DNA of 64,000 nt from Octopus sinensis (taxonomy: Eukaryota). The notes beneath the pieces were generated by a model that ran no database searches, had not been told where the DNA came from, and saw only the letters and a list, made by a program, of their open reading frames with translations. Location: positions 44,454,001 through 44,518,000 of the forward strand of contig NC_043000.1 in the NCBI RefSeq assembly GCF_006345805.1, in the 5' to 3' direction. This document shows positions 5,089-61,109 of this stretch, one piece after another (position 1 is the first letter of the stretch; each line of letters begins with the position of its first letter). Made by a program: the position numbers and the translations under genes.

Positions 5089-5582
<494 letters not shown>

Positions 5583-20822: not shown

Positions 20823-20873
<51 letters not shown>

Positions 20874-21016
20874 TAAATAGATAGATAGATAGATAGATAG
20901 ATACACACACATATATATATATATATAGATTTATATATACATACATATTATATATATATATATAGAGAGAGATAGATATAGATATATAGATATATATACA
21001 TATATATACACACATA

Positions 21017-21060
<44 letters not shown>

Positions 21061-21070
21061 AGATATATGC
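20800..21070. repeat. Compound (CA)/(TA)/(TAGA) microsatellite
   Basis: Directly visible; the overlapping IY-rich ORFs are artefacts. Confidence 0.95.
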
Positions 21071-21699
21071 GGTAATGTATACTGCTCATAACTGTGATCA
21101 AATTACACGTATCACTGGAGGTTTCAGGTACTGAAGTTGCAGGCAAGTTAGCTGCGGTGCCCCAGCAAGGCCGCAGCGCTAGAGCTAAAACTATTTAAAA
21201 AGCTAGAGTGATATTGATCTCAAAGACTGATATGTCAGAACATACTCATCCAGAAGCATTCACGCATTTATTACCTCCACCTCCATACATCAACGTTATA
21301 CTCTCACTCTCACTCAAGACTACACATCAGGTCTACAAGAGACAAAAGCAGTGTAAGGTTGATATCAACATCGCCATAAATACATGCTTTTCTCGTTCCC
21401 ATACTGAAAGCAGAGATGTTTCATGTTTGAAATATATCTTAAAAAAGATAGTCCAACTGTTCAATAACCGATCGGAGAATGAAATGCAGAACAAAATCAA
21501 GCATAATAAGACCTCCTTTAAAAGAATTCACAGACATTTTGAGAAAATTCGACCTTGATTTTCTTCAACGAATGTTTAATAACAACGACAGCAACAAAAA
21601 ACAAAGCCAATGCAACAGTAACTATCACTACATGACCTGCGGCCCTGTTCAGTCCTCAATTCTAGCGCAATGGGTCAGCTATTAAACTCTACATTCAAA

Positions 21700-22540
21700 A
21701 GCGTTTTACATTCCACGTTTTCTCTGTCCTGTCCAGTCATCATCATTGTTCTGATCATGTTTACAAATTTTTCTGTGCAACCTATTTTCGTTAGAATTAG
21801 CCACAGAGCATTTCGTTTAATATAATCGAATGCTTTTCTCAAATCAATAAAGCAATGGTAACGGGCAAGATTCTTTTCAATGGACTTCTCTTGCAATTGT
21901 CTGATAGTAAAGATACAATCAGTTGTACCCCTGGAGGAGCGAAAACCACACTGAGACTCAGACACCATATTTGGAACTGTGAAGGTATTTAAACGTTCTA
22001 ACAGAATGCGGGCAAGTACCTTTTCAACCACAGACAAAAGCAATATCCCACGAAAAATGCCATACAGATCCTTTGGACCCGATTCATACAAGAAGACTAA
22101 AATGGCATCAATCCAATTTCGAGGCACTTTCTCAGTGCTTCAAAAGAAACAAATTAATATATTTAATAGTTCAAGTATTTTGTCATCCCCATATTTCAAG
22201 ACCTCTGCACAGATTCCGTCAGACCCTGAAGACTTATTGTTATTCAGCTTATTCACAGCTAAACAAATACCATTTAGAGGTGGCTGAAATGTCATCTATT
22301 CTATAATTGGAACGTGTTCTATTTTTTCTATCATGTTCATGTCAGCAGGTGATGGTCTATTTAAAAGTGCAGGAAAATGTTCTACCCAGCTATAATGTAT
22401 AGAAGTGATGTCAGTAAAAAGCAAACGTCAATGTGCTATTCTCACTGGAGCTATTGAAGAAGATTTTGGGCCATGTACCTTCTTAACATAAGAGTACAAA
22501 TCATTGGCGTCATTTCTATCAGCTGCTTCTGGTGCCCCTG
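21700..22540 (-). mobile_element. RTE-BovB-like LINE fragment (pre-RT and N-terminal RT domains), pseudogenised
   Basis: KVHGPKS / NKSSGSDGICAEVLKYG / WIDAILVFLY...FRGILLLSVVEKVLARILLERL...ESQCGFRSSRGTTDCIFTIRQLQEK...FIDLRKAFD. Confidence 0.9.
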
Positions 22541-25599: not shown

Positions 25600-25822
<223 letters not shown>

Positions 25823-34707: not shown

Positions 34708-34926
34708 CCCCAAGATTCCGAGTTCGATTCCAAGCAGTGACCTGAATAATAATAATAACAACAACAACAAAAACGACAACAATAATAATAATAATAATAA
34801 TAACAATAATAATAATAATAATAACAACAACAACAACAACAATAATAATATTCATAATAACAATAACAACAACAATAATAATAATAATATAATAATAATA
34901 ACAATAACAACAACAACAACAACAAC

Positions 34927-34994
<68 letters not shown>

Positions 34995-37845
34995 GATATC
35001 CTTGCCAAAGCACAAAGGATCCGCCGGCACAAGAAACGCCAACGTTTCTTTGAACAAAACAAACAGTCCAACTCCAACCTCAAAATGTTCTACCAAGAAC
35101 TTGGCAAAAATAAAATAGAAATCACTGCAGCACCAACGGCAGAAGAACTGGAAGAATTCTGGAGAGAAATATGGACGGGGAACGAACAACCAGAAAAATG
35201 GAGTATTAAAACAACAAACTCAGCATCTGAGCAACTTTGGACCCCCATAACAACTGAAGAGGTTACCCAGGCACTGCAAAGGCTAAGCAACTGGAAGGCA
35301 CCTGGGCATGACAAGATCCCAACTTCTGGTTGAAATATCTAACAGGAATGCACAAAAAGCTGGCTGAAAATTTTAACAACATACTGGCAGAGCCAGAGAC
35401 AATGCCTGAGTGGCTCACGAAGGGGAAAACAATCTTAATTCCCAAAACAAATGAGGCAGCAAAACAAGAAAACTACAGACCTATAACCTGTCTCCGTACA
35501 ATGTACAAAGCATTTACTGCAGTGATATCGCAAAGATTGAACAAGCACCTGGACGAAAACAACCTGTTTCCAGAAGAGCAGAAAGGATGCCGCAAAGGCT
35601 CATATGGCTGTAAAGATCAACTATTGATCAATAAAGCCATAACTGAAGACAGCCACAGAAAGAAGAAAGGCCTTATTATGGCCTGGATCGACTACAAAAA
35701 GGCGTTTGATAGTATCCCCCACACATGGATCCTCGAAACACTAGCCATGAACAAAGTTGCACCAACAATTATAAAATACATAGGACACTATGAATAAATG
35801 GCAAACGGTGCTACAGCTCCAAACAAAAGAGGGACTTGTGAAAACTAAAGCCATCCCCATTAGAAGAGGAATATACCTGGGAGATACGCTCTCTCCACTC
35901 CTTTTCACCTCTATCGGATATGCTAAACAGAACTGGATGCGGATATAAATGTTACGGCAAAACAATCAGCCACCTTTTATATATGGATGACCTAAAATTA
36001 TACGCTGCTAATGACAAACAGCTGCAAACACTACAAAAGATAGTTCATGGATTTACCAAAGAAATAGATATGAAATTTGGATTAGAGAAATGCGCCAAAG
36101 TAACCCTGGAAAGAGGAAAACTAGTTAAGAGTAGCAACATCACACTAGATAAAACCAATGAAATAAAAGAATTAGACCAAAGCCAAACTTACAAATACTT
36201 AGGAATCCATGAACTAGATAAGACACAACACACACAAATGAAAGAGAAAATAAAAAAAGAATACTATAGACGAGTTAGATCAATACTAAAAACAGAGCTC
36301 AATGCTAAAAACAAGATAATAGGCATCAACACTTTAGCCGTCCCAGTTATAAGTTACAGCTACAATATCCTTAACTGGACACTAAATGAACTGACCAAAA
36401 TAGATAAGAAAACAAGAAAAATAATGACAGGGTCTAGGATGCATCACCCAAAATCTGACATAGAAAGGCTATATATACAACGTATAGATGGGATGGTGGT
36501 AGAGGCCTTATACAGCTGGAAAACTACTATAAAATAACAACCATAGGACTGCAAAAAATATCTACTTCAGAAGGAAGGAAAACTGATACAAATAGCGGCA
36601 AAACACGAGTAAAACAAAAAACTGTTCTCAGTATTTAAGGAAGCTGACATATACAAACAAGAAATCATACCACCTAACAAATATGAAGAAGAAGAAGAAG
36701 ATGAAGGTACAACAAAAGCTATAAAACAAATGAAATCCAAACTGAAAATAGAACAGCAACGAACCATGATAAAACGATGGCAAGAAAAGCCCCTTCATGG
36801 TAAATACTGGACTAAACTAAATGCAAAAGAAATAGACAAAGAAAAATCCCAATAATGGTTGAGAAGCTCAGAACTCAAAGCAGAGACAGAAGGATTTTTA
36901 ATTGCAGCACAAGACCAAAGCCTCCCCACCAGAAATTACCAAAGACATGTAATGAAATGAAATATAACAAGTAACTGCAGAATATGTGGAGATGGACAAG
37001 AAACAATGAATCATATTATCTCTGGCTGCCCAGTCCTGGCTAAGAAAGAATATATTCATAGACACGACAGAGTTGGGACTTATATACACTGGATACTATG
37101 CCAACATTATCGAATAACAACAGAAAAAAAGATGGTATAGGCACACACCAGAAAAGGTCACAGAAAACGTGAAAGCAACCATACTCTGGGATATGCCAAT
37201 ATACACAGATAGGGAAATGAAGGCCAACAGACCAGATATATTTGTCAGAGATCATGAAGAAAAACAATGTTTTCTAATTGATGTATCAATACCAGCGGAT
37301 GACAACGTATCTCTAAAAGAAATGGAGAAACTTTCAAAATACAAAGACCTTGAAATAGAGGTAACCAGAATGTGGAATCTAAAAACAGAAACAATTCCTA
37401 TCATAATAGGTACATTAGGCATGATAAAAAAATATTCAAATACATAACAAAAACACCAGGACTTCCAAACACATATAACATACAGAAAATTGCACTACTA
37501 GGCACTGCACACATCCTATGCAGAACGCTTTCCATACAATAACCATCAGAGCATCACAACAAATCACAGCACATACCCAAGGCACACAGAGCTGTGATCG
37601 GTATTGAAGTGAAAGCATGATATAAAAAATATACTACTGAATCATAATGATAATAATAATAATAAAATAATAGTAATAATAATAACAACATCAAAAAATA
37701 CCTTAGGAATGAGTACCCAGTGTTCGAAATATTTCCAAGACAGCTTTTCAAGGCTGGAGGGTATGTCAGCCGAAACGTTGTGTTAACAACAAACAAGATG
37801 AGGACAAATATCTGTCAAATGCAAATAATGTAAATAATGTACATA
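34705..37845 (+). mobile_element. Copy 2 of the same element (head 34705-34745, tail ~37640-37845), split by a LINE in its (AAT)n middle
   Basis: Head taaccccaagattccgagttcgattccaagcagtgacctga. Tail caaaaaataccttaggaatgagtacccagtgttcgaaatatttccaagac...ggctg-gagggtatgt-cagcc-GAAAC-gttgtgtt aligns with the reverse complement of 34525-34610. Confidence 0.7.
34995..37640 (+). mobile_element. 5'-truncated R4/Dong-clade non-LTR retrotransposon (RT, CCHC knuckle, restriction-like endonuclease) with frameshifts and stops
   Basis: NWKAPGHDKI, ENYRPITCL, EEQKGCRKGSYGCKDQLLI, WIDYKKAFDSIPH, SHLLYMDDLKLYA, CRICGDGQETMNHIISGCPVLAKKEYIHRHD, NRPDIFV...FLIDVSIP...EKLSKYKDL. (TAA)n flanks both sides. Confidence 0.92.
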
Positions 37846-47026: not shown

Positions 47027-50000
47027 TATTACGATTAGACAAAAGGAAACAGTAAATATGACAAACAAGTCCATAATAATTCAATTATGCATTGTGAAAG
47101 AAATGTTGCAGGAATCCACACCAAACTAAGCGAAAGCTGTCAATATTTTAGAGTTCCCGGCACAAAGCCGTCACAAAATGTGAGAGCTTGAACTAGAGCT
47201 GTAATAAATAGATTTGAGTTTGCCAGTCATTACTGTTTGAAAATCTCGTGTTGGAGATCGACGTCGTCAATTTCCTTGTTTCATTCCAAATTCTCAAAAA
47301 GGAGTCTGATCTTTTTATCTCCTTGTGTTTGTACGGTGTTTACGTTGGTTATAGTAGTATGTAGATACTGACAGCGAGATAGAGGCGAAAGACAGAAAGA
47401 TGCAATCATTCTGCTGGTCATTTTAGCAGCGACATAGAAAGAGAGGATGACCCTTGTCATACTAAAGCGTGCTAGTGTAAGTTGTAAATATCATAGTCGT
47501 CTCCTGTCGTCTTCATCCAACCAACTCCTTCTACTCACTAACTTTGGCTTATGGAATTTTGGTATGTATAATTATCGCAGAAAAATGAGAAAAAGAGAGA
47601 GATGTCACCGAGAACAATGGAAAACATTTGTAGGTGCCTCTTATTTAATTTCAGCTTTTTCTGCCATAGGAGAGGTCAAAAATGTCAAGTGGGAAATATA
47701 TGAATTTATTTGGCAGGCCATGTGTTGAGCGTAACTGCTGTCAACCATTGCATTTTCCGTGAGAAAAGGCCGTTGTAAGGGGAGTTCTATAAATTCAGGT
47801 TCGCATCTACATGCCGAAACAGAATTCACTGTCTCCTATTTCCAAGGAAAACACACTTTCCTAACACTCACACCCACTTAGGGTAACGAAAGTATCACAA
47901 ACGCTTTCTGTAACAATAACAGTGATAATACACTTAACATCGTAAGTAAAACACTGAAGTATGATATACAATGCAGATACAGAAAACAAAATCCTTTGCA
48001 ATCACAAGAGCGGCAATCCTACGAAGAGGAATAGCTTGAGGAAATCTGGCAGAAGCACATATGATAGTGAGAGGACACCAAGTAACAGAGTTAGTCTTAG
48101 GTAAGTAATCAACATGACTGAAATGTTTTCTAACAATTTGGCATGCACGGCAGTTTTTACAAAATTCAGCCACATCTTGATCCAAACTAGGCAAAACGAA
48201 ATATACCAATTTTTTTCAGATGCTTTATCTGCCATGGGACCTTCATGTGACACTGAAAGCACATGATTCCGAAACAATTTAGGTACCACAATTTGATGGT
48301 ACACTTTCCACACATACCCCGCGGAAATGTCCGGTGGTCTATATTTCCTCATCATAATATCATCCCGAAAGCAGTAGCAAACTGGAATCTAGCTAATCTC
48401 CTCAAAAGAAATAGCCTTATTAGCTAACTTCTGTAAGTCAGCATTCTCACTCTGCGTACTAACAAATTGCTCTCTAGAAAGAATGCTTATACCTTGCAAA
48501 AAGAATGATCCATGAAATTACCTGACAAATCACAAATGGATTACTTAGGTAAAGAAGACTTGGAAGAGATGTCTTTCGACATCGAACGAATAACTTCACA
48601 AGAAAGAAAAATACCGGAAAAATCCTCCTCTATCTTTTCTGTACTAGCTGAACTCTCTGGAGAAACAGTGATCATGGGATCAGCAACACATTGGATCCCA
48701 TAAGATCACTTCTAATCAATAAATCGACACACGGAACTGGAGGAGAGTCAAGAACACCTACTTTCGCCTCACTAGAAATCAAATCTGCTGTTAAATTGAC
48801 AAAATGGAGGGGAGCGAGAAAATAGCCACCTATAGTCTGAAGCGAAACCTCTGAGTTCGCTGAAAGGAAATATATCCTTCAATATCAGGGACTGGAGAGT
48901 TCCAGTATCCCGCAAAATATTAATGGCAGAATTATACCCATGACACGGAACTTTTGTAAACAAAGGACAAAAGCTTCCGAACTATGGAATCTGGAAGTTC
49001 TCTTTCACAATTAAAACTCTCCAAAGAGAAAGGATTAGGTGCGACAGAAACAAAAGCATTTGGGAAAACCGTGGACTGATATGTTTGAGACATGCCGGAA
49101 TCAAATGACCTGGCCTCTTACAATATGCACATACAGGACCGAAACCAGTGGGAATCCTAGAATTAAGCTAGGGTGAATGGGACCGCCTCTCCGAAAAAAA
49201 GTGATCTCGTTCTATCACCACTGGAACCTGCAAGACCTGAACTCCTACCCGGGAAAAAACCCTTTTGAACCAGAAGACGATGATCAAAAGAATCGCTGTG
49301 AGTCAGGTAATAGTCATCCGCCAACATAGCGGCATTATGAGAAAACACCATCCTTTCTTTCATCCAAATATATCCTGAGATCGGAATGAACACTCTGTTT
49401 GAAATCCTCCATCAAAACTGCCTCAAGATATCAACATATGTGACCACCTTAGAACTACACCACCAATCAAAGAAAGTTTCTCTCTTCCTAGCAAACTCTA
49501 CAAAAATCTCATTGTCTCTTTTATGAGCATTCCTGAATGTTTGTTGATAAGCTTTGAGTACTAACTCATAAGTGTTTAGTTATGTCCCCTTAACCAGATC
49601 ATAATCTGAACGCTATTCTGCAGATAAGGCCGTAAATGTGTATTGAGCTTTACCTGGCAACATACTTTGCAGTCGCATAGTCCACGACTCCTTAAGCCAC
49701 TTGATGTTTTCAGAAACCTTTTCGACATGTAGAAAATACTTCTCTACCTCTTTTTCATTGAAAGGAAGAACTAGTCTGGCATATCTCGCAACTTCGAAAC
49801 AGGGAAGATTTGAGGGAGGAAAAGAAGTTTCTATCTTTTAAGCTCAATTTCTTTTCCTAACTTCATTTCTAATTGGACCTGAAGCCTTTTTTATTTCCAA
49901 ATCATCTGAAGGTTCTTCCGTTACTATCTCTAAAACATGATGTTCAAAGTCTACTTCATCGACGAAGTGATTCAAAACAATTTTCAAGATCTGACACTTC

Positions 50001-52440: not shown

Positions 52441-54577
52441 AGATTCCTGCTTCAATTAGGTAGATGTTGGTTTGTTAATAAAACATTTTTTCTATATGGA
52501 ATCGTGAGTATTGTCAAACTTAATTTTAAATAAGGAATTAGAACTGAATGTTATGTTTCTCAGTTTATGTTCCTCACTATGATCAATTGTTGTCCTTATC
52601 ACTGAATTAATTTTGTTGTCCAATTTTGTTTTCAATTATGAAAACACTACTCGAAAAAGAAATGCATACCTTATACTTCAGGCTAAATATAGCGTACTCA
52701 TATCCCAGCCCTAAAGAGTTAGACTAAAACCAAGCAAATCAAATAAGTATTTTACCCTATATCATTGTTTCACATACATCTGAGATAAGTATTTAATACT
52801 AAGTGTATCTATTTAGACAAAAGAGATTTCAACTTTTCGGCCACGAAAATATAGCAATGTATTGAAAACTTCCAAATGCCATACACGTAAATATGAGTGG
52901 TTACTGTCCTTCCACAGATATATTGTCTATTGATATATAAGTCGCATATTTCAGTGCCTCATTGTCAGTCCTTCCCACTGTTCCATAAAGACAGAATGAA
53001 TAGAATGCCAAGCTATTAGGAAGACTAGTCAACACTTATATGTTACACAAGAAGAGATGACATGATTTGTAACCCAGACAATTCTCTTTTTTTCCCTCTA
53101 ACGCTAAGCTATGTTTGCATTGGTTGTCCCCATTTCAAATTTCTTTCATTGTGCTAGTAGCAAACTCGATATTATGATCATGTCAACCATCATAACATTT
53201 AAAAAAGATAACATGAAAAGTTATCTCTAAGATTTAACATAGTGCTGAGTCTAATATACACAAATCTCTCATGATAAGTGAAATAATTTGCAACGTCAAA
53301 ATTACTCTCCCTAGACGATTCATTGGCCATACACAACTGCTGATCAATGGAAATTAAGGAGACTTCTTTTAATCTACTGAGATATCTTCAGAATATAATT
53401 TATAATATCCTTATTAACACTAACTTATGAACTATTTTAGGATAACATGTTGCAAAATATTCCAAAGCTGCAACAAATTTGTATCGTTTTTAGAACTCTG
53501 CATGATTTCTGAATTTTTCCTGGTGTCACGTAAGATGAAATGCATAGAGGTCTGCCAACACAATCAAAAAACGAAAACGTCAGAATCCTTTAAAGTTCTA
53601 TGACGCGCAAAAATGTCCCCGGAAACTCATCGGGAATATGATTGCGATAATCCATTACTTTTTGTTTATCTTTTCAAGTTAATCAGATTCACTTTTATTA
53701 CATGGCATTACTAATTAGGAATATTTCTATTGAGATTAATTGTTATGAAAGTTTAAAAACATTATATGGGGATGACGTTTACAGTATTAAAATGTCAACG
53801 TACTGGTGATTGAAAAGCCTTCGATTATATACGAATTACCTATTTGATCAACGTGAATCAACTGTTTAACAACACACACACACACACACACAAAAGAAAA
53901 AATCCTTATTATAATTCTCAAATATGCTCAAACTTTGTTTCTCCTGCTGTCAGACCTGGAAAAGCGAGCCCTCTTGGACAGTGAATTTCGAAATGTCTTA
54001 GAGTAACATTTAGTGCAAGGTTTTATTAATGAAACATGTGGTGAAAACGAAACTTCATGATGCAGTGTTTTCAGAAACGCTGAAGTAACCTTAATACAAT
54101 AGAAATGCAATAGTACCTGAAAATATAAAATAACTTGTTCAATATTGCAGCGAAATTTTGTATCGGATGTGTGTCGCTGACGGTAAATTTAAAACCTTGT
54201 GTCAGATGACTAGAAGATAGAAACGGAAACGTATGTATGTACAATAATAGTATATCATGCTTTGAATCAGTGAAGAACATCAATTAGACGGAATGTTTTT
54301 ATCAATGTTTTAAATCAAACGTTGCAATAATCGCAATAATTTTCATTGGAATTCTTTTATGAAACGTTGCGATAATTGAACAAAAACTTAAATATTAGAA
54401 GAGTCAATTATACTTGAAGGCTATGTCTGATAGGCAGAAATACAAAACAAAAAAGATGATCAATTTAAATGCATAGTTACGATAAAAAGCTGACACGTGG
54501 TTGTTTTTGGCGAAAGAAATCAGCGGAAAACATTTTATTTCTAAAACGAAATGTTATATGCTGTCATATATATATTT

Positions 54578-54627
<50 letters not shown>

Positions 54628-54894
54628 GCAATTAAGGACAACTACTTAATAAGGAAACCTTAACAAGAAATTGTCAGGTAGATAGCGTGAAAACCTCATA
54701 AGAGAAAAAATTTCGAAAATAATTATTTCTTATTGAACATATTAATTTATATATAGAGAGGGCATTATACATACATGCCAGAAGGCATTATACATACAAG
54801 CCACACGCTAAGAGGGACAATTAGTCATTTCTACCAAAAATATTACTAATCCCACCGAATGCAATTTTTCAAAGTAAGACATTTAAAAAAATAT

Positions 54895-54942
54895 AGACCT
54901 GTATCACAGTGATTTCATACTTACGTACTCATCAGCAGGCCT
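54895..54942 (-). ncRNA. Type I hammerhead ribozyme
   Basis: Exact reverse complement of 55893-55940. Confidence 0.82.
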
Positions 54943-55375
54943 GAATGTATTATAAATAAACAACAACCCTGCCTCGCTTAAGCCGATCAGCTAACTGATC
55001 AACATCAACGAAGCACATGGGTGAGTTTACATATATTACATCCGGATAAATGGCAAACTTTTACGAATTGCATTTCGGGAGACGAAAAGTTTTTTCGGAA
55101 TAAAAATTTAGCAATTAAGGACAACTACTTAATAAGGAAAACTTAACAAGAAATTGTCAGGTAGATAGCGTGAAAACCTCATAAGAGAAAAAATTTCGAA
55201 AATAATTATTTCTTATTGAACATATTAATTTATATATAGAGGGCATTATACATACATGCCAGAAGGCATTATACATACAAGCCACACGCTAAGAGGGACA
55301 ATTAGTCATTTCTACCAAAAATATTACTAATCCCACCGAATGCAATTTTTCAAAGTAAGACATTTAAAAAAATAT

Positions 55376-55423
55376 AGACCTGTATCACAGTGATTTCATA
55401 CTTACGTACTCATCAGCAGGCCT
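55376..55423 (-). ncRNA. Type I hammerhead ribozyme
   Basis: Exact reverse complement of 55893-55940; 481 nt from the previous copy. Confidence 0.82.
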
Positions 55424-55892
55424 GAATGTATTATAAATAAACAACAACCCTGCCTCGCTTAAGCCGATCAGCTAACTGATCAACATCAACGAAGCACATG
55501 GGTGAGTTTACATATATTACATCCGGATAAATGGCAAACTTTTACGAATTGCATTTCGGGAGAGGAAAAGTTTTTTCGGAAAAAAAATTTAGCAATTAAG
55601 GACAACTACTTAATAAGGAAAACTTAACAAGAAATTGTCCGGTAGATAGCGTGAAAACCTCATAAGAGAAAAAATTTCGAAAATAATTATTTCTTATTGA
55701 ACATATTAATTTATATATAGAGAGGGCATTATACATACATGCCAGAAGGCATTATACATACAAGCCACACGCTAAGAGGGACAATTAGTCATTTCTACCA
55801 AAAATATTACTCACCCATGTGCTTCGTTGATGTTGATCAGTTAGCTGATCGGCTTAAGCGAGGCAGGGTTGTTGTTTATTTATAATACATTC

Positions 55893-55940
55893 AGGCCTGC
55901 TGATGAGTACGTAAGTATGAAATCACTGTGATACAGGTCT
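55893..55940 (+). ncRNA. Type I hammerhead ribozyme
   Basis: aggcctg (stem I)-CTGATGA-gtac-GTAA-gtat (stem II, GNRA loop)-GAAA-tcac-t-gtga-TA (stem III, AUA site, predicted cut after 55933)-caggtct (stem I'). Confidence 0.85.
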
Positions 55941-56376
55941 ATATTTTTTTTAAATGTCTTACTTTGAAAAATTGCATTCGGTGGGATTAGTAATATTTTT
56001 GGTAGAAATGACTAATTGTCCCTCTTAGCGTGTGGCTTGTATGTATAATGCCTTCTGGCATGTATGTATAATGCCCTCTCTATATATAAATTAATATGTT
56101 CAATAAGAAATAATTATTTTCGAAATTTTTTCTCTTATGAGGTTTTCACTCTATCTACCTGACAATTTCTTGTTAAGTTTTCCTTATTAAGTAGTTGTCC
56201 TTAATTGCTAAATTTTTTTTCCGAAAAAACTTTTCCTCTCCCGAAATGCAATTCGTAAAAGTTTGCCATTTATCCGGATGTAATATATGTAAACTCACCC
56301 ATGTGCTTCGTTGATGTTGATCAGTTAGCTGATCGGCTTAAGCGAGGCAGGGTTGTTGTTTATTTATAATACATTC

Positions 56377-56424
56377 AGGCCTGCTGATGAGTACGTAAGT
56401 ATGAAATCACTGTGATACAGGTCT
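56377..56424 (+). ncRNA. Type I hammerhead ribozyme
   Basis: Identical to 55893-55940, 484 nt downstream. Confidence 0.85.
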
Positions 56425-56559
56425 ATATTTTTTTTAAATGTCTTACTTTGAAAAATTGCATTCGGTGGGATTAGTAATATTTTTGGTAGAAATGACTAAT
56501 TGTCCCTCTTAGCGTGTGGCTTGTATGTATAATGCCTTCTGGCATGTATGTATAATGCC

Positions 56560-56599
<40 letters not shown>

Positions 56600-56744
56600 T
56601 CTGTGCATGAAAAGATAGCACGATGGACAAGGTTTGAATAAATTAGGTCATACATTCTACTCATTCAAGGAATTATTTCCCTCAATGAGTAGAATGATGA
56701 TAATGATGATGATGATGATGATGACGACGACGACGAATAATAAT

Positions 56745-56850
56745 AACAAAACAACCATACACTGGGAAATGCCAATACACACATATAAAGAAAACAAAGC
56801 TCTCAGACCAGATAGTGTCGTCCAGGACCACCAAGTAAAGGGTGCCTTCT
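56745..56850 (+). mobile_element. Short R4/Dong-like RLE-domain fragment
   Basis: KTTIHWEMPIHTYKENKALRPDSVVQD aligns with KATILWDMPIYTDREMKANRPDIFVRD of the 35-37.6 kb LINE. Confidence 0.6.
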
Positions 56851-57267
56851 AATCAAATGACAATGTATTTCTAAAAAGAACAAAAAGTCTGGAAATTTAA
56901 AACTCTGGAAATAGAGTTAAGCTTAATACGGGGTCTGAAAAGAGATATAATCCCTATAATAATAGGTGCATAAACTATTCTTAAAATGCACACAGAAAAT
57001 ATATATCTAAAATACCATGTCTTACGAATGTATATAAGATGCAGAAAATAGCACTGCTTGGCCTGCACATAGCCTGCATAAAATATTTTAAATATACAAA
57101 AATAACTCCTAAACAAACGACAGCATATACTCAAGGCACCGGGAGGAGCATTCAGTGGGGTACTAAAAGCACGTGATATAAACACGAGAACTGAATAATA
57201 ATGATGATGATGATGATGATGATGACGACGACGACAACGACGACGACGACGACGATGACGACGACAA

Positions 57268-57474
57268 TGATTTCAAATTTTGGCACTAGGCTATCAATTT
57301 CAGAGGAGAGGATAACTCCATTACATCGACACCGGTTTTCAACTGGAAATTATTTTATCGACCCAGAAAGGCAAAGTAGAAATCGGTGAAATTTGAACTG
57401 AAAACGTGACGACGGACGAAAAGCCGTTAAATCATTTCTTCCAGCGTGTTAATAATTCTGCAAGCTCGCAGCCT
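57268..57474 (-). mobile_element. SINE family A copy
   Basis: ggcactaggc...ttacatcgacaccgg...ttttatcgacccagaaagg...gaaatttgaactgaaaacg...ctgcaagctcgcagcct. Confidence 0.7.
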
Positions 57475-59151: not shown

Positions 59152-60009
59152 AATAACGTTAGTCACTCACGTCGATTTTGACGTATGAATGTTTGAAATA
59201 AAAATATTAAAAAAATGATTATAAGGCAAAATAAGAGATGTTGCATCTATTTGCGTTGGGGGTGTGAATACAATTTGAGTCCAGGTATTGCTTTTGCTTT
59301 AAAGTAACAATAGAGACGTTGAAGATTATGGTTTGCCAGGGAGTGAATAAATATGACTGTTGATTGCAGGATATAATCCTTTAATTGTTCTGTTTTTCCG
59401 GTTGTTTAGCTGCCACATGACACTTTGTACGGTACTTACGTCGATGTTGATAATACATTTCGAAAGATGCTTAAACAAGATGTAACGATTTTAGAGATTG
59501 TTTCAACTGTTCCTTAAACCTAAGGACAGGTCTGCTTTACCACACAATCCCTCTATGTGTTGGCCATATAAAAGAATTTTCGGAATGCCATCATCTTGCA
59601 TACGAACAACATGTCCTTACCAAATGCATTGAATTCTGAAAAGCATGCTTTCGATGGTGGAGATACATTTTACGTATTTTATGTATTTTATGTGGAAGAT
59701 ATTGCGCAGACAGCACATGTGAAAAGTTTCAAGTTTGTTTATATGTTTGTAATAGAGAGTTCGTGTTTCAGTCTCGTACAAAAGCGTGCTCAAAATAAAT
59801 GATGTATATACACCTGTTTCAGTTTTAAAACTGACGTCGTGTTAATTCCATTAAGGAAGAGAAAGTTTTCCAAAAGCACTTGTAGTCTTAAATATTCCGA
59901 CATTGATTTCGTCATCAAAAGTACTCTTAGATTTTATTGTACTTTCAAGATATTTAAATGACGTAATTTGAGTGGCTTATTGTCACATACGAATCATCAC
60001 TATAATCTG

Positions 60010-60490
60010 TCCCCGGCCTTTGTTGGAATAAAACGTCTTTCTTCTGAATGCTAATAGTAAGCCCAAATGCATGAGCTGCAGCAGCAAATCTGTCAGCTAT
60101 TTTCTGAATTCCCTCAAATATATGAGAAATCACAGCGCAATGAGCAGCTAACAGAAATTCACTTAGAATCGCTTCCTTTGTCTTTTTCTTGGTCCCGAAG
60201 CTTTGTCCATTTACATGTAGTAGATCTCCATCTGTACAATACTCAAATTTTGCAGTTTCATAGTAATCCTTAAAAGCATGTTGGGAGCATCATCGAAAAG
60301 AATATGGCAACAGTACAGGAGCAAAACAAAACAGCCCTGCTTAGTTCCAGTAGAGACAGAAAATACCTCTGGACATTGACCGTTAGTTATCACTGTTGCT
60401 ATAACTCCTTCGTGTAGAGATACTGTTACCTTCATCAATTTATTATTCACTGTGTCAAAGACCTTGGGCAACTCGACAAAGACCATGTAG
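60010..60490 (-). mobile_element. RTE-BovB-like RT fragment (central domains)
   Basis: FVELPKVFDTV...LHEGVIATV...FSVSTGTKQGC / LLAAHCAVISH...IQKIADRFAAAAHAFGLTISIQK. Confidence 0.8.
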
Positions 60491-61109
60491 AAATTAATAT
60501 TTTGCTTGAATTGCCTAACGGCATTATTTATGTCCCAAATCGATATTGAGATTAATAATACATGCGGTTTAATACATGCTTATTGACGCAGTTAAGAAAC
60601 ACTGTCGAAAATATTTTTCCAGCAATTCACAGCAAATGTATTCCCTTTTTATTATCAAATAAAATATTCTTCCCTTTGTTTAAATACAAGTGTGTTATAG
60701 TTGCATTTTTTTAACTGTTGGAGAACAGATCCAGTTTCCCAGATCGAACAGATGAATCTGGGTAAATTTCTTACAAGCTGCCAACTGTGATGCGTGTAAA
60801 CGTCTTTGAGAATATCATCCTGTCCAAGAGCTTTACTATTGCAATTTTTATTTTATTTAAATAGCAGTACTTATCTTTTCGTAGGTAGTATCTTCTGCAA
60901 ATTACTCAAGTTAGATTATGAAAGATTTCATTGATTACTTCAGGATCAATAGAGAACTTTTGATTGAATGCGAATTTGAAGTGTTCAGTTCAGTTTTTTC
61001 ATAATTTCAACTTTACTACTTAAGAGATTTGACCTGCCATTTAAAATGATAGGTTTCATAACGAACGTTTTTTGGGGAATTTCATCTTACTGCTATGGCG
61101 GCATCAGAA

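What the first reader, a model, noticed from the sequence alone, without database searches (positions are those of the whole stretch)
54627..56580. 482-bp tandem repeat carrying a complete hammerhead ribozyme: a candidate cephalopod non-LTR retrozyme
Seen: near-identical ~482-bp non-coding units. Four copies contain aggcctg-CUGAUGA-guac(GUAA)guau-GAAA-ucac-u-guga-UA/caggucu, with all conserved core nucleotides, a 7-bp stem I, a GNRA-capped stem II and an NUH (AUA) site. Known: short tandem repeats with one type I hammerhead per unit define metazoan non-LTR retrozymes, which are transcribed as multimers, self-cleave to monomers, circularise, and are thought to use Penelope-like RTs. Inferred: this array would yield 481-484-nt monomers or circRNAs, longer than the roughly 170-400 nt I recall for described animal families. 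It is young, and I know of no description of this family.
Basis: partly seen in the sequence, partly recalled or inferred. Interest (0 to 1): 0.93.

Follow-up and report, generated by a model that had tools for sequence, protein, structure and literature searches.

The report
Hammerhead-bearing retrozyme array, inserted head-to-head
A young, non-coding 482-bp repeat with one complete hammerhead self-cleaving RNA motif per unit sits in a TA microsatellite as two opposed arrays, which fits a new family of a known kind of small circular-RNA retrotransposon (animal retrozymes), though cleavage, expression and copy number remain untested.

Summary
Four identical 48-nt hammerhead (HHR) motifs lie 481-484 nt apart in a 98-100% identical, non-coding, 33% GC repeat. 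A matching descriptor occurs 0.0004-0.002 times per shuffled window.

One correction: this is not a single tandem array. There are 2.46 units with the HHR on the minus strand (54628-55811) and 1.57 units on the plus strand (55812-56565). Their 5' ends are joined head-to-head at a 3-nt microhomology. Both 3' ends run into one split (TA)n microsatellite. That is the published insertion signature of Penelope-like elements, the proposed mobilisers of animal retrozymes.

The sense monomer RNA folds far better than shuffles (z -8.2; antisense -4.5; 14 control windows averaged +0.25).

Weak points:
- Rfam does not call the motif (best 16.6 bits against a threshold of 52).
- Helix II closes with a G.U wobble instead of the conserved G-C pair.
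- Helix III is unstable alone and probably needs a dimeric double hammerhead.
- No other copy, Penelope-like element, transcript or host taxon could be retrieved.

The size is not unusual: published units reach 972 bp, and pDo500 is about 500 bp.

Verdict: probably a new member of a known kind, of moderate interest.

The parts
54566..54627 (.). Left half of the (TA)n target microsatellite, about 31 repeats
   Evidence: TRF; sequence. It abuts the 3' end of the left arm (...CCTTAATTGCTA|TATATA on the sense strand).
54628..55811 (-). Left arm: 1184 nt = 2.46 units, HHR-sense on the minus strand. Its 5' end is truncated at unit position 56; its 3' end lies at unit position ~274 (GCTA).
   Evidence: TRF period 481, 98% matches; alignment of units; blastn of the unit; coordinates.
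54895..54942 (-). Hammerhead motif copy 1 (48 nt, helix I to helix I); predicted cleavage after the base complementary to 54902
54902..55382 (-). Complete 481-nt monomer, from one predicted cleavage site to the next
55376..55423 (-). Hammerhead motif copy 2; predicted cleavage after the base complementary to 55383
55809..55811 (.). Head-to-head junction. The 3-nt microhomology ACT is shared by the 5' ends of both arms (left arm unit position 56-58, right arm unit position 360-362).
   Evidence: The junction is asymmetric, so this is not a simple fold-back palindrome.
55812..56565 (+). Right arm: 754 nt = 1.57 units, HHR-sense on the plus strand. Its 5' end is truncated at unit position ~360-363; its 3' end lies in the unit's own CTCTCT-ATATATA patch (unit position ~148-155).
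   Evidence: the repeat finder D3 and I1-I9; alignment; blastn
55893..55940 (+). Hammerhead motif copy 3; predicted cleavage after A55933
55934..56417 (+). Complete 484-nt monomer. The predicted RNA is 66% paired, MFE -137.1 kcal/mol, z -8.2.
56377..56424 (+). Hammerhead motif copy 4; predicted cleavage after A56417
56566..56599 (.). Expanded (CT)n followed by the right half of the (TA)n target microsatellite, about 12 repeats
   Evidence: TRF; sequence

Best explanation
This locus is one insertion of a non-autonomous, hammerhead-bearing retroelement of the animal non-LTR retrozyme type, with a 481-484-nt unit.

Shown by the sequence:
- Two arrays of the same unit (2.46 and 1.57 units) face each other.
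- Their 5'-truncated ends are joined at a 3-nt microhomology.
- Both 3' ends run outward into one split (TA)n microsatellite, at internal UA-containing positions of the unit (about 274 and about 150), not at the ribozyme cleavage site.
- Each unit carries one complete type I HHR core.

Inferred life cycle:
1. Elements of this family are transcribed as sense multimers.
2. Two neighbouring HHRs pair through the palindromic helix III (AUCAC-U-GUGAU) into a double hammerhead. [quoted passage not shown]
3. A host tRNA ligase (RtcB type) closes the monomer into a circle of about 482 nt. The circle folds into a compact branched structure in which the single HHR is disfavoured, so it is not re-cut.
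4. A Penelope-like element's GIY-YIG endonuclease opens a (TA)n site. Both exposed 3'-OH ends anneal to UA patches of the template and prime reverse transcription.
5. The RT travels more than once round a circular (or along a multimeric) template.
6. The two cDNAs are joined by microhomology, giving the head-to-head tandem arrays seen here.
For: 1. The motif is complete and unlikely by chance. C3-A9, G12-A14, A15.1-U16.1 and H17=A are all present, with helix I 7 bp and helix II 4 bp plus a GUAA loop. Chance expectation is 0.0004-0.0024 per window.
2. There is exactly one HHR per unit and at least two consecutive units per arm. This meets the operational retrozyme definition.
3. The unit is non-coding and AT-rich: at most 54 aa stop-free, 32.6% GC. 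That matches the family description.
4. The RNA structure is strand-specific. Sense MFE is -137.1 against shuffles -92.5+-5.4 (z -8.2). Antisense z is -4.5. Fourteen control windows gave mean z +0.25, minimum -2.5. The global MFE contains helices I and II of the HHR. Retrozyme circles are described as highly self-paired.
5. Helix III alone is worth 0 to -0.2 kcal/mol but -12.1 as an intermolecular duplex. Co-folding two HHRs yields the double-hammerhead topology at -30.5 kcal/mol. This matches the dimer-dependent metazoan type I HHRs.
6. The architecture matches the published Penelope-like element hallmarks: tandem plus inverted 5'-truncated copy, and (TA)n targets that obscure target-site duplications. 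The asymmetric junction rules out a simple fold-back.
7. Both arms exceed one unit, and their 3' junctions are internal to the unit. That fits a circular or multimeric template.
8. An arm-specific variant (T7 in both left units, T8 in both right units) fits each arm being copied processively from its own template.
Against: - Rfam covariance models do not recognise the motif: none at gathering score, and the best is HH9 at 16.6 bits against 52.
- The 10.1-11.1 pair is G.U, not the highly conserved G-C.
- Helix II is worth only -1.1 kcal/mol and helix III about 0.
- The local MFE of the 48-mer pairs UGAU of the core with AUCA instead of forming helix III.
- Loop-loop tertiary contacts could not be assessed.
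- Only this one locus is known. There is no other copy in the window, none in the viral or metagenome collections, and no ORF-derived hit in the protein collections.
- No GIY-YIG or Penelope-like RT lies in the window.
- Conservation of the HHR relative to the rest of the unit is uninformative: 0 of 7 variant sites fall in the HHR, but only 0.7 are expected.
- At genome scale (Gb), several to tens of chance descriptor matches are expected.
- There are no data on transcription, cleavage or circles.
Confidence: 0.65

Rival explanations
1. This is an ordinary long-period tandem or inverted duplication (satellite-like DNA) that happens to contain a hammerhead-like string. No ribozyme or RNA intermediate is involved, and the arrays arose by replication slippage, unequal exchange and an inversion in a TA-rich fragile region.
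For: - Rfam does not call the motif.
- Helices II and III are marginal, and 10.1-11.1 is a wobble pair.
- My shuffles imply roughly one equally good chance match per ~160 Mb of genome, so a Gb genome holds several.
- The first-stage scan looked at many windows.
- Another long-period duplication (197 bp x 2.2) also sits in a TA microsatellite at 5149-5582, with no HHR.
- No second copy of the family was found anywhere.
Against: - A chance motif would have to fall inside the one ~480-bp repeat of the window.
- That repeat would also have to show an extreme, sense-biased RNA fold (z -8.2 against -4.5 antisense; controls no lower than -2.5).
- It would also need a palindromic helix III suited to dimer formation.
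- It would also need both outer ends in one (TA)n with 5'-truncated ends joined asymmetrically by microhomology.
- Slippage or fold-back would give symmetric arms and a common phase.
Confidence: 0.2
2. This is a remnant of an autonomous Penelope-like element. The repeats are its pseudo-LTR or 3'-terminal region, which normally carries the HHR. They were left after extreme 5' truncation or internal deletion, and do not represent a separate non-autonomous family.
For: - Penelope-like element pseudo-LTRs carry type I or minimal HHRs, and these elements insert as partial tandems with inverted 5'-truncated copies into (TA)n.
- Retrozyme consensus sequences are homologous to pseudo-LTRs in Xenopus.
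Against: - The repeat is in register with a 481-484-bp period over 2.46 and 1.57 units. The template was therefore itself about 482 nt periodic, not a 3-4-kb element.
- No RT or GIY-YIG coding remnant lies in or next to the array.
- In practice an ORF-less, tandemly templated pseudo-LTR derivative is what the 2026 preprint calls a non-LTR retrozyme, so this rival largely merges with the main explanation.
Confidence: 0.08
3. This is an assembly artefact, for example a chimeric or fold-back long read producing a false inverted repeat.
For: Near-identical inverted arms (99% complementary) are a known product of missed-adapter reads. No reads are available to check.
Against: - The junction is asymmetric: unit position 56 is joined to unit position ~360, and 167 nt of the right arm have no mirror partner.
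- The arms differ at several sites and in length.
- The outer flanks are unique sequence on both sides.
- Even if the inversion were false, the tandem HHR units would remain.
Confidence: 0.03

Closest known systems
Metazoan non-LTR retrozymes (Cervera & de la Pena 2020, PMC7229834; Li, Clavereau & Pollet 2026, bioRxiv 10.64898/2026.07.22.740005)
   Same: - Short non-coding tandem units with one type I HHR each.
- Low GC content.
- No LTR, PBS or PPT.
- Predicted highly self-paired monomer RNA.
- A weak helix III implying dimeric cleavage.
- The size lies inside the 51-972 bp range now reported.
   Different: - No sequence similarity to any described family could be tested.
- The HHR has a G10.1.U11.1 wobble, a GNRA-capped AU-rich helix II and a longer palindromic helix III (5+5 nt around one U) than the usual 1-2 bp.
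- Expression, circles and copy number are unknown here.
- The head-to-head arrangement in (TA)n is not described in the retrozyme papers I read.
- No cephalopod retrozyme was found in the searched literature, and the host taxon of this window is unverified.
Penelope-like elements (PLEs) and their pseudo-LTR hammerheads (Cervera & de la Pena 2014, PMC4209133; Craig et al. 2021, PMC8557442)
   Same: - Insertion anatomy: partial tandems, an adjacent inverted 5'-truncated copy, and (TA)n microsatellite targets that hide target-site duplications.
- HHRs with a palindromic helix III that are thought to act as dimers.
   Different: - No RT or GIY-YIG ORF.
- The unit is about 482 bp rather than 3-4 kb.
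- No 30-40-bp tail was seen.
- This HHR has a full helix III and a short helix II. The minimal PLE variants lack helix III and have a long helix II with a bulged base after A9.
Hammerhead-bearing satellite DNAs: Dolichopoda pDo500 (about 500 bp, PMC2837043), newt satellite 2, Schistosoma Sm-alpha
   Same: Tandem units of a few hundred bp with a single type I HHR that processes multimeric transcripts. pDo500 has practically the same unit length.
   Different: Those are high-copy satellites with demonstrated self-cleavage and cross-species conservation of the HHR. Here only 4 units at one locus are known, and nothing has been shown experimentally.
L1 twin priming (Ostertag & Kazazian 2001; cited from my own knowledge)
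   Same: Both 3'-OH ends at a target break prime cDNA synthesis, and the cDNAs are joined by microhomology, giving an inverted 5' segment.
   Different: In L1 both arms come from one linear polyadenylated RNA and together are at most one element long. Here each arm exceeds one unit and starts at an internal position, implying a circular or multimeric template.

Membership tests
Hammerhead ribozyme (Rfam clan CL00010) | Conserved core: C3 U4 G5 A6 N7 G8 A9, G12 A13 A14, the A15.1-U16.1 pair, and H17 (not G) at the cleavage site | tested here: met
   CUGAUGA ... GAA A...U A|C is present in all four copies. Descriptor matches are 0.0004-0.0024 per shuffled window.
Hammerhead ribozyme (Rfam clan CL00010) | Three helices around the core, with the highly conserved G10.1-C11.1 pair closing helix II | tested here: inconclusive
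   Helix I is 7 bp and stable. Helix II is 4 bp but closes with G10.1.U11.1 and is worth only -1.1 kcal/mol. Helix III is 4 bp with a 3-nt loop and is worth about 0 kcal/mol alone, but -12.1 as a dimer duplex. Conservation of the G-C pair is stated.
Hammerhead ribozyme (Rfam clan CL00010) | Score at or above the Rfam gathering threshold for a hammerhead model | tested here: not met
   No hit at gathering score and none at E<=10 in 2.4 kb. The best is RF02275 HH9 at 16.6 bits against 52, E 0.058, in a 101-nt search with 17 helix I consensus positions deleted.
Hammerhead ribozyme (Rfam clan CL00010) | Tertiary contact between loop II and helix I/loop I; actual self-cleavage | not testable with these tools
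   Needs 3D modelling or in vitro transcription. Only one sequence variant is available, so no covariation test is possible.
Metazoan non-LTR retrozyme | Tandem repeat with at least two consecutive units, each carrying a complete type I HHR with MFE below -5 kcal/mol (operational definition, Li et al. 2026) | tested here: met
   Definition. TRF period 481 x 2.5. Two HHRs per arm lie 481 and 484 nt apart. HHR MFE is -12.4.
Metazoan non-LTR retrozyme | Short non-coding unit, low GC (<45-50%), no LTR/PBS/PPT | tested here: met
   481-484 bp, 32.6% GC. The longest stop-free stretch is 54 aa. No tRNA-like element. The size is above the 150-450 bp of the 2020 paper but inside the 51-972 bp range.
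Metazoan non-LTR retrozyme | Monomer RNA predicted to be highly self-paired | tested here: met
   66% paired; z -8.2 sense against -4.5 antisense; controls mean +0.25, minimum -2.5.
Metazoan non-LTR retrozyme | Many dispersed genomic copies (mobility) and co-occurrence with autonomous PLEs | not testable with these tools
There is no further copy in the 64-kb window and no PLE domain in the window. No hits in the viral, metagenome or protein collections.
Metazoan non-LTR retrozyme | Expression as linear and circular RNAs of unit length | not testable with these tools
   No transcriptome data are available.
PLE-type integration (mechanism, not membership as an autonomous PLE) | Partial tandem plus adjacent inverted 5'-truncated copy; (TA)n microsatellite target | tested here: met
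   Hallmarks as described. Locus anatomy.
Autonomous Penelope-like element | ORF with a telomerase-like RT and a GIY-YIG endonuclease | tested here: not met
   The only Pfam hits in the window are LINE-type RVT_1 at 21678-22139 and 35312-36534, plus a weak Integrase_H2C2. Nothing lies in or next to the array.

The most novel reading that the evidence does not exclude
This locus is a preserved record of how animal retrozymes integrate. Both ends of a break in a (TA)n microsatellite primed reverse transcription on circular 482-nt RNAs at internal UA patches. Each cDNA ran more than once round the circle, and the two were joined head-to-head by microhomology. That would be direct structural evidence that retrozyme circles are copied by rolling-circle, twin-primed, Penelope-type target-primed reverse transcription. 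It would come from a previously undescribed family (possibly cephalopod) whose hammerhead tolerates a G10.1.U11.1 wobble and works only as a dimer.
Probability: 0.35. Interest if true: 0.55.

Novelty: new member of a known kind. Interest (0 to 1): 0.42.

Why it matters
If confirmed, this adds a retrozyme family that standard Rfam-based annotation misses. It would come from a lineage for which I found no retrozyme description; the giant squid genome paper reports only '235 hammerhead 1 ribozymes' and Penelope elements.

More usefully, the locus offers a testable structural link between retrozymes and Penelope-like integration machinery. The 2020 review stated that retrozyme repeats show no motif revealing which autonomous element mobilises them. 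The 2026 preprint argues for PLEs from sequence homology only. Three insertion features could be surveyed genome-wide to test the rolling-circle and PLE model: head-to-head 5'-truncated arms, (TA)n targets, and 3' junctions at internal unit positions.

It does not change the known picture of what retrozymes are.

Tried and rejected
- **Rfam.** Searched at gathering score on the whole window, at E<=10 on 2.4 kb, and on 101 nt. Only the last gave a sub-threshold HH9 hit. There is no ribozyme on the antisense strand.
- **Other copies by DNA pattern.** The exact 23-mer HHR, a degenerate HHR pattern and a 34-mer from the unit's stable hairpin were searched against viral contigs and metagenome contigs. 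All returned nothing.
- **Other copies by spurious ORF calls in the protein collections.** I tried an exact look-up of 10 unit ORFs, a search with the 54-aa stretch, and a search with a concatenate of 22 of the 23 stop-free pieces of at least 17 aa, the 54-aa stretch being left out because one search had already searched it. All returned nothing. This says little about copy number, because such short ORFs are rarely called.
- **Host taxon.** The best relative of the window's LINE RT is 76% identical, in an unannotated NCBI assembly (GCA_024449705.1) that I could not name. Exact look-ups of two window ORFs were not on record. 'Cephalopod' therefore stays unverified.
- **Penelope-like element in the window.** A Pfam scan of concatenated ORFs (a hand-curated subset of the stop-free ORFs of at least 78 aa, 5552 aa in all, with low-complexity microsatellite translations removed) found none.
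- **Literature search for the motif sequence.** No paper contains it.
- **Conservation of the HHR relative to the rest of the unit.** Rejected as uninformative with 7 variant sites.
- **Simple fold-back palindrome or missed-adapter artefact.** Rejected because the junction is asymmetric.
- **The 197-bp duplication at 5149-5582 as a second HHR element.** Rejected; it has no core motif.
- **Circular-fold shuffle script.** One run timed out. It was replaced.
Full report
**Observation**

Reading 54300-57000 confirms a ~482-bp repeat between two TA microsatellites. The string AGGCCTG-CTGATGA-GTAC-GTAA-GTAT-GAAA-TCACTGTGA-TA|CAGGTCT occurs four times, all identical. Two copies are on the plus strand (55893-55940, 56377-56424) and two on the minus strand (55376-55423, 54895-54942).

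Predicted cleavage sites are 484 nt apart on the plus strand and 481 nt apart on the minus strand. Units are 98-100% identical. Seven sites vary (five substitutions and two indels), and none lies in the motif. The unit cannot encode a protein: the longest stop-free stretch in six frames is 54 aa. GC content is 32.6%.

**Correction to the anatomy**

TRF reports a tandem only for 54626-55811 (period 481, 2.5 copies). The remainder is the same unit inverted. On the HHR-sense strand the structure is as follows.
- The left arm (54628-55811, minus strand) is 1184 nt = 2.46 units.
- The right arm (55812-56565, plus strand) is 754 nt = 1.57 units.
- The two 5' ends meet head-to-head at 55809-55811, sharing the trinucleotide ACT. 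The left arm starts at unit position 56 and the right arm at about 360.
- The junction is therefore asymmetric: 167 nt of the right arm have no mirror partner. That excludes a simple fold-back or missed-adapter palindrome.
- Both 3' ends point outward into (TA)n: 54566-54627 on the left and 56575-99 on the right.
- The left arm ends at ...GCTA|TATATA, at unit position ~274.
- The right arm ends inside the unit's own CTCTCT-ATATATA patch, at unit position ~148-155, with the CT tract expanded.
- Neither 3' junction is at the ribozyme cleavage site.

**Is the hammerhead more than chance?**

All core positions are present: C3-A9 = CUGAUGA, G12-A14, A15.1-U16.1 and H17 = A. Helix I is 7 bp with one G.U pair. 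Helix II is 4 bp capped by GUAA.

I wrote a descriptor for this architecture and ran it on 2500 dinucleotide-preserving shuffles of the window (320 Mb, both strands). There were 6 hits at relaxed thresholds and 1 hit as good as the real motif, i.e. 0.0024 and 0.0004 per window. In the real window the only hits are the four copies.

At the scale of a Gb genome several chance matches are still expected. The motif alone is therefore not proof.

**What the curated models say**

Rfam gives no hammerhead at gathering score and none at E<=10 in a 2.4-kb search. Restricted to 101 nt, the best clan member is HH9 (RF02275) at 16.6 bits against a threshold of 52. The core aligns perfectly, but 17 helix I consensus positions are deleted. 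Rfam-based genome annotation would miss this family.

**Weak points of the motif**

- The 10.1-11.1 pair is G.U, whereas G-C is described as highly conserved.
- Helix II alone is worth -1.1 kcal/mol, and helix III alone is unfolded.
- The 48-mer's MFE (-12.4) pairs UGAU of the core with AUCA instead of forming helix III. The hammerhead fold costs -9.4.
- Helix III is a near-perfect palindrome (AUCAC-U-GUGAU). As an intermolecular duplex it is worth -12.1 kcal/mol.
- Co-folding two motifs spontaneously gives the domain-swapped double hammerhead at -30.5 kcal/mol, against -24.8 for two separate monomers.

This dimer dependence is the behaviour described for most metazoan type I HHRs, for newt and axolotl repeats, and for PLE hammerheads: an unstable palindromic helix III, with activity in tandem transcripts as dimers. 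I therefore predict dimer-dependent cleavage. I put the chance of detectable cleavage in vitro at only about 0.6.

**Independent evidence for an RNA-level element**

- The sense monomer (55934-56417) folds to -137.1 kcal/mol, against -92.5+-5.4 for shuffles (z -8.2, 0 of 100 shuffles as good).
- The antisense strand gives z -4.5.
- Fourteen other 484-nt windows from the same sequence gave mean z +0.25, sd 1.4, minimum -2.5.
- The fold is 66% paired, with 18 G.U pairs among 160.
- It contains helices I and II of the hammerhead. Helix I closes a three-way junction that holds the rest of the molecule.

Retrozyme circles are described as highly self-paired.

**Independent evidence for the mode of insertion**

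Craig et al. 2021 describe canonical and new Penelope-like elements as forming partial tandems. [quoted passage not shown] They show a strong bias for microsatellite targets, (TA)n in Neptune and Naiad elements, which hides target-site duplications.

The locus reproduces all three traits. The geometry is coherent with twin priming.
- The plus-strand 3'-OH at the left (TA)n would prime the cDNA of the left arm.
- The minus-strand 3'-OH at the right (TA)n would prime that of the right arm.
- Each would anneal to a UA patch of the template.
- The two cDNAs would be joined at a 3-nt microhomology.

Both arms exceed one unit and begin at internal positions. The template was therefore circular or multimeric, not a cleaved linear monomer primed at its end. 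The poly-U length variant is T7 in both left units and T8 in both right units. This weakly suggests that each arm was copied processively from its own template. These steps are inference from anatomy.

**Comparison with known systems**

The locus meets the operational definition of an 'active non-LTR retrozyme' (TRF tandem, at least 2 consecutive HHR units, MFE below -5). It also matches the descriptive features of Cervera & de la Pena 2020: short non-coding AT-rich tandem units with type I HHRs and no LTR, PBS or PPT.

The 2026 survey reports consensus lengths of 51-972 bp, with an average of 650 bp in ray-finned fishes. The cave-cricket pDo500 hammerhead satellite is about 500 bp.

I found no description of a cephalopod retrozyme. 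The giant squid genome paper lists 235 Rfam hammerhead_1 hits and Penelope elements.

The papers I read do not mention inverted arrangements or microsatellite targets for retrozymes. The 2020 review states that the repeats show no motif revealing their mobiliser.

**What could not be done**

- No other copy of the unit was retrievable from the window, from viral or metagenome contigs, or through ORF-based look-ups.
- Family-level conservation, copy number and covariation are therefore untested.
- The window holds only LINE-type RT remnants and no GIY-YIG domain.
- The host taxon could not be established. The 33% GC, microsatellite-rich, LINE-bearing sequence is compatible with an invertebrate genome, but 'cephalopod' is unverified.

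**Verdict**

The retrozyme interpretation is the best explanation (about 0.65). It rests on four independent lines:
- a complete motif;
- one motif per unit in tandem;
- extreme sense-strand structure;
- a PLE-type insertion signature.

The main rival is a chance motif in an ordinary duplication (about 0.2). This is a new member of a known kind. Its most interesting aspect is the insertion architecture, which can be tested genome-wide.

Noticed in passing
window 34995-37444 (+); 21678-22139 (-); 59957-60579 (-); 47937-48215 (-): Decayed retrotransposon remnants. A LINE-type RT is broken into several stop-free pieces (RVT_1 E 1.4e-21; best relative 76% identical, in assembly GCA_024449705.1). 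A second RVT_1 fragment scores E 4.9e-12. One stretch looks RT-like by eye but has no Pfam hit. There is a sub-threshold Integrase_H2C2 match (19.4 bits against a cutoff of 25.5).
   Followed up: partly
window 5149-5582: A 197-bp unit duplicated 2.2 times at 98% identity, embedded in (AT)n. It is another long-period duplication in a TA microsatellite but has no hammerhead core, so TA tracts here may also promote ordinary duplications.
   Followed up: partly
window 20825-21068, 34745-34994, 25617-25812: Very long microsatellites: (AT)~123, (AAT)~84 and (ATAG)~50. The whole window is 29-40% GC and dense in simple repeats.
   Followed up: no
window 54628-56565 (variant sites at unit positions 217, 227, 245, 285, 303): All five substitutions among the repeat units are transversions (T/G three times, T/A, C/G). 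That is unusual for ordinary decay and may reflect RT errors or assembly errors.
   Followed up: no
window 54628-56565: Read-through transcription across the head-to-head arms would form a hairpin RNA of about 750 bp at 99% complementarity. That is a plausible source of small silencing RNAs against the family.
   Followed up: no
window 55918-55919 and the three equivalent positions: U11.1 is followed by G12. A canonical C11.1-G12 would be a CpG, so the G.U wobble could be a C-to-T decay product inherited from the template copy.
   Followed up: no
window 56690-56735 and 57201-57270: Trinucleotide runs (ATG)n/(GAC)n lie just right of the array. They produced spurious weak Rfam matches (MicF, snoRNAs) that are chance hits.
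   Followed up: yes
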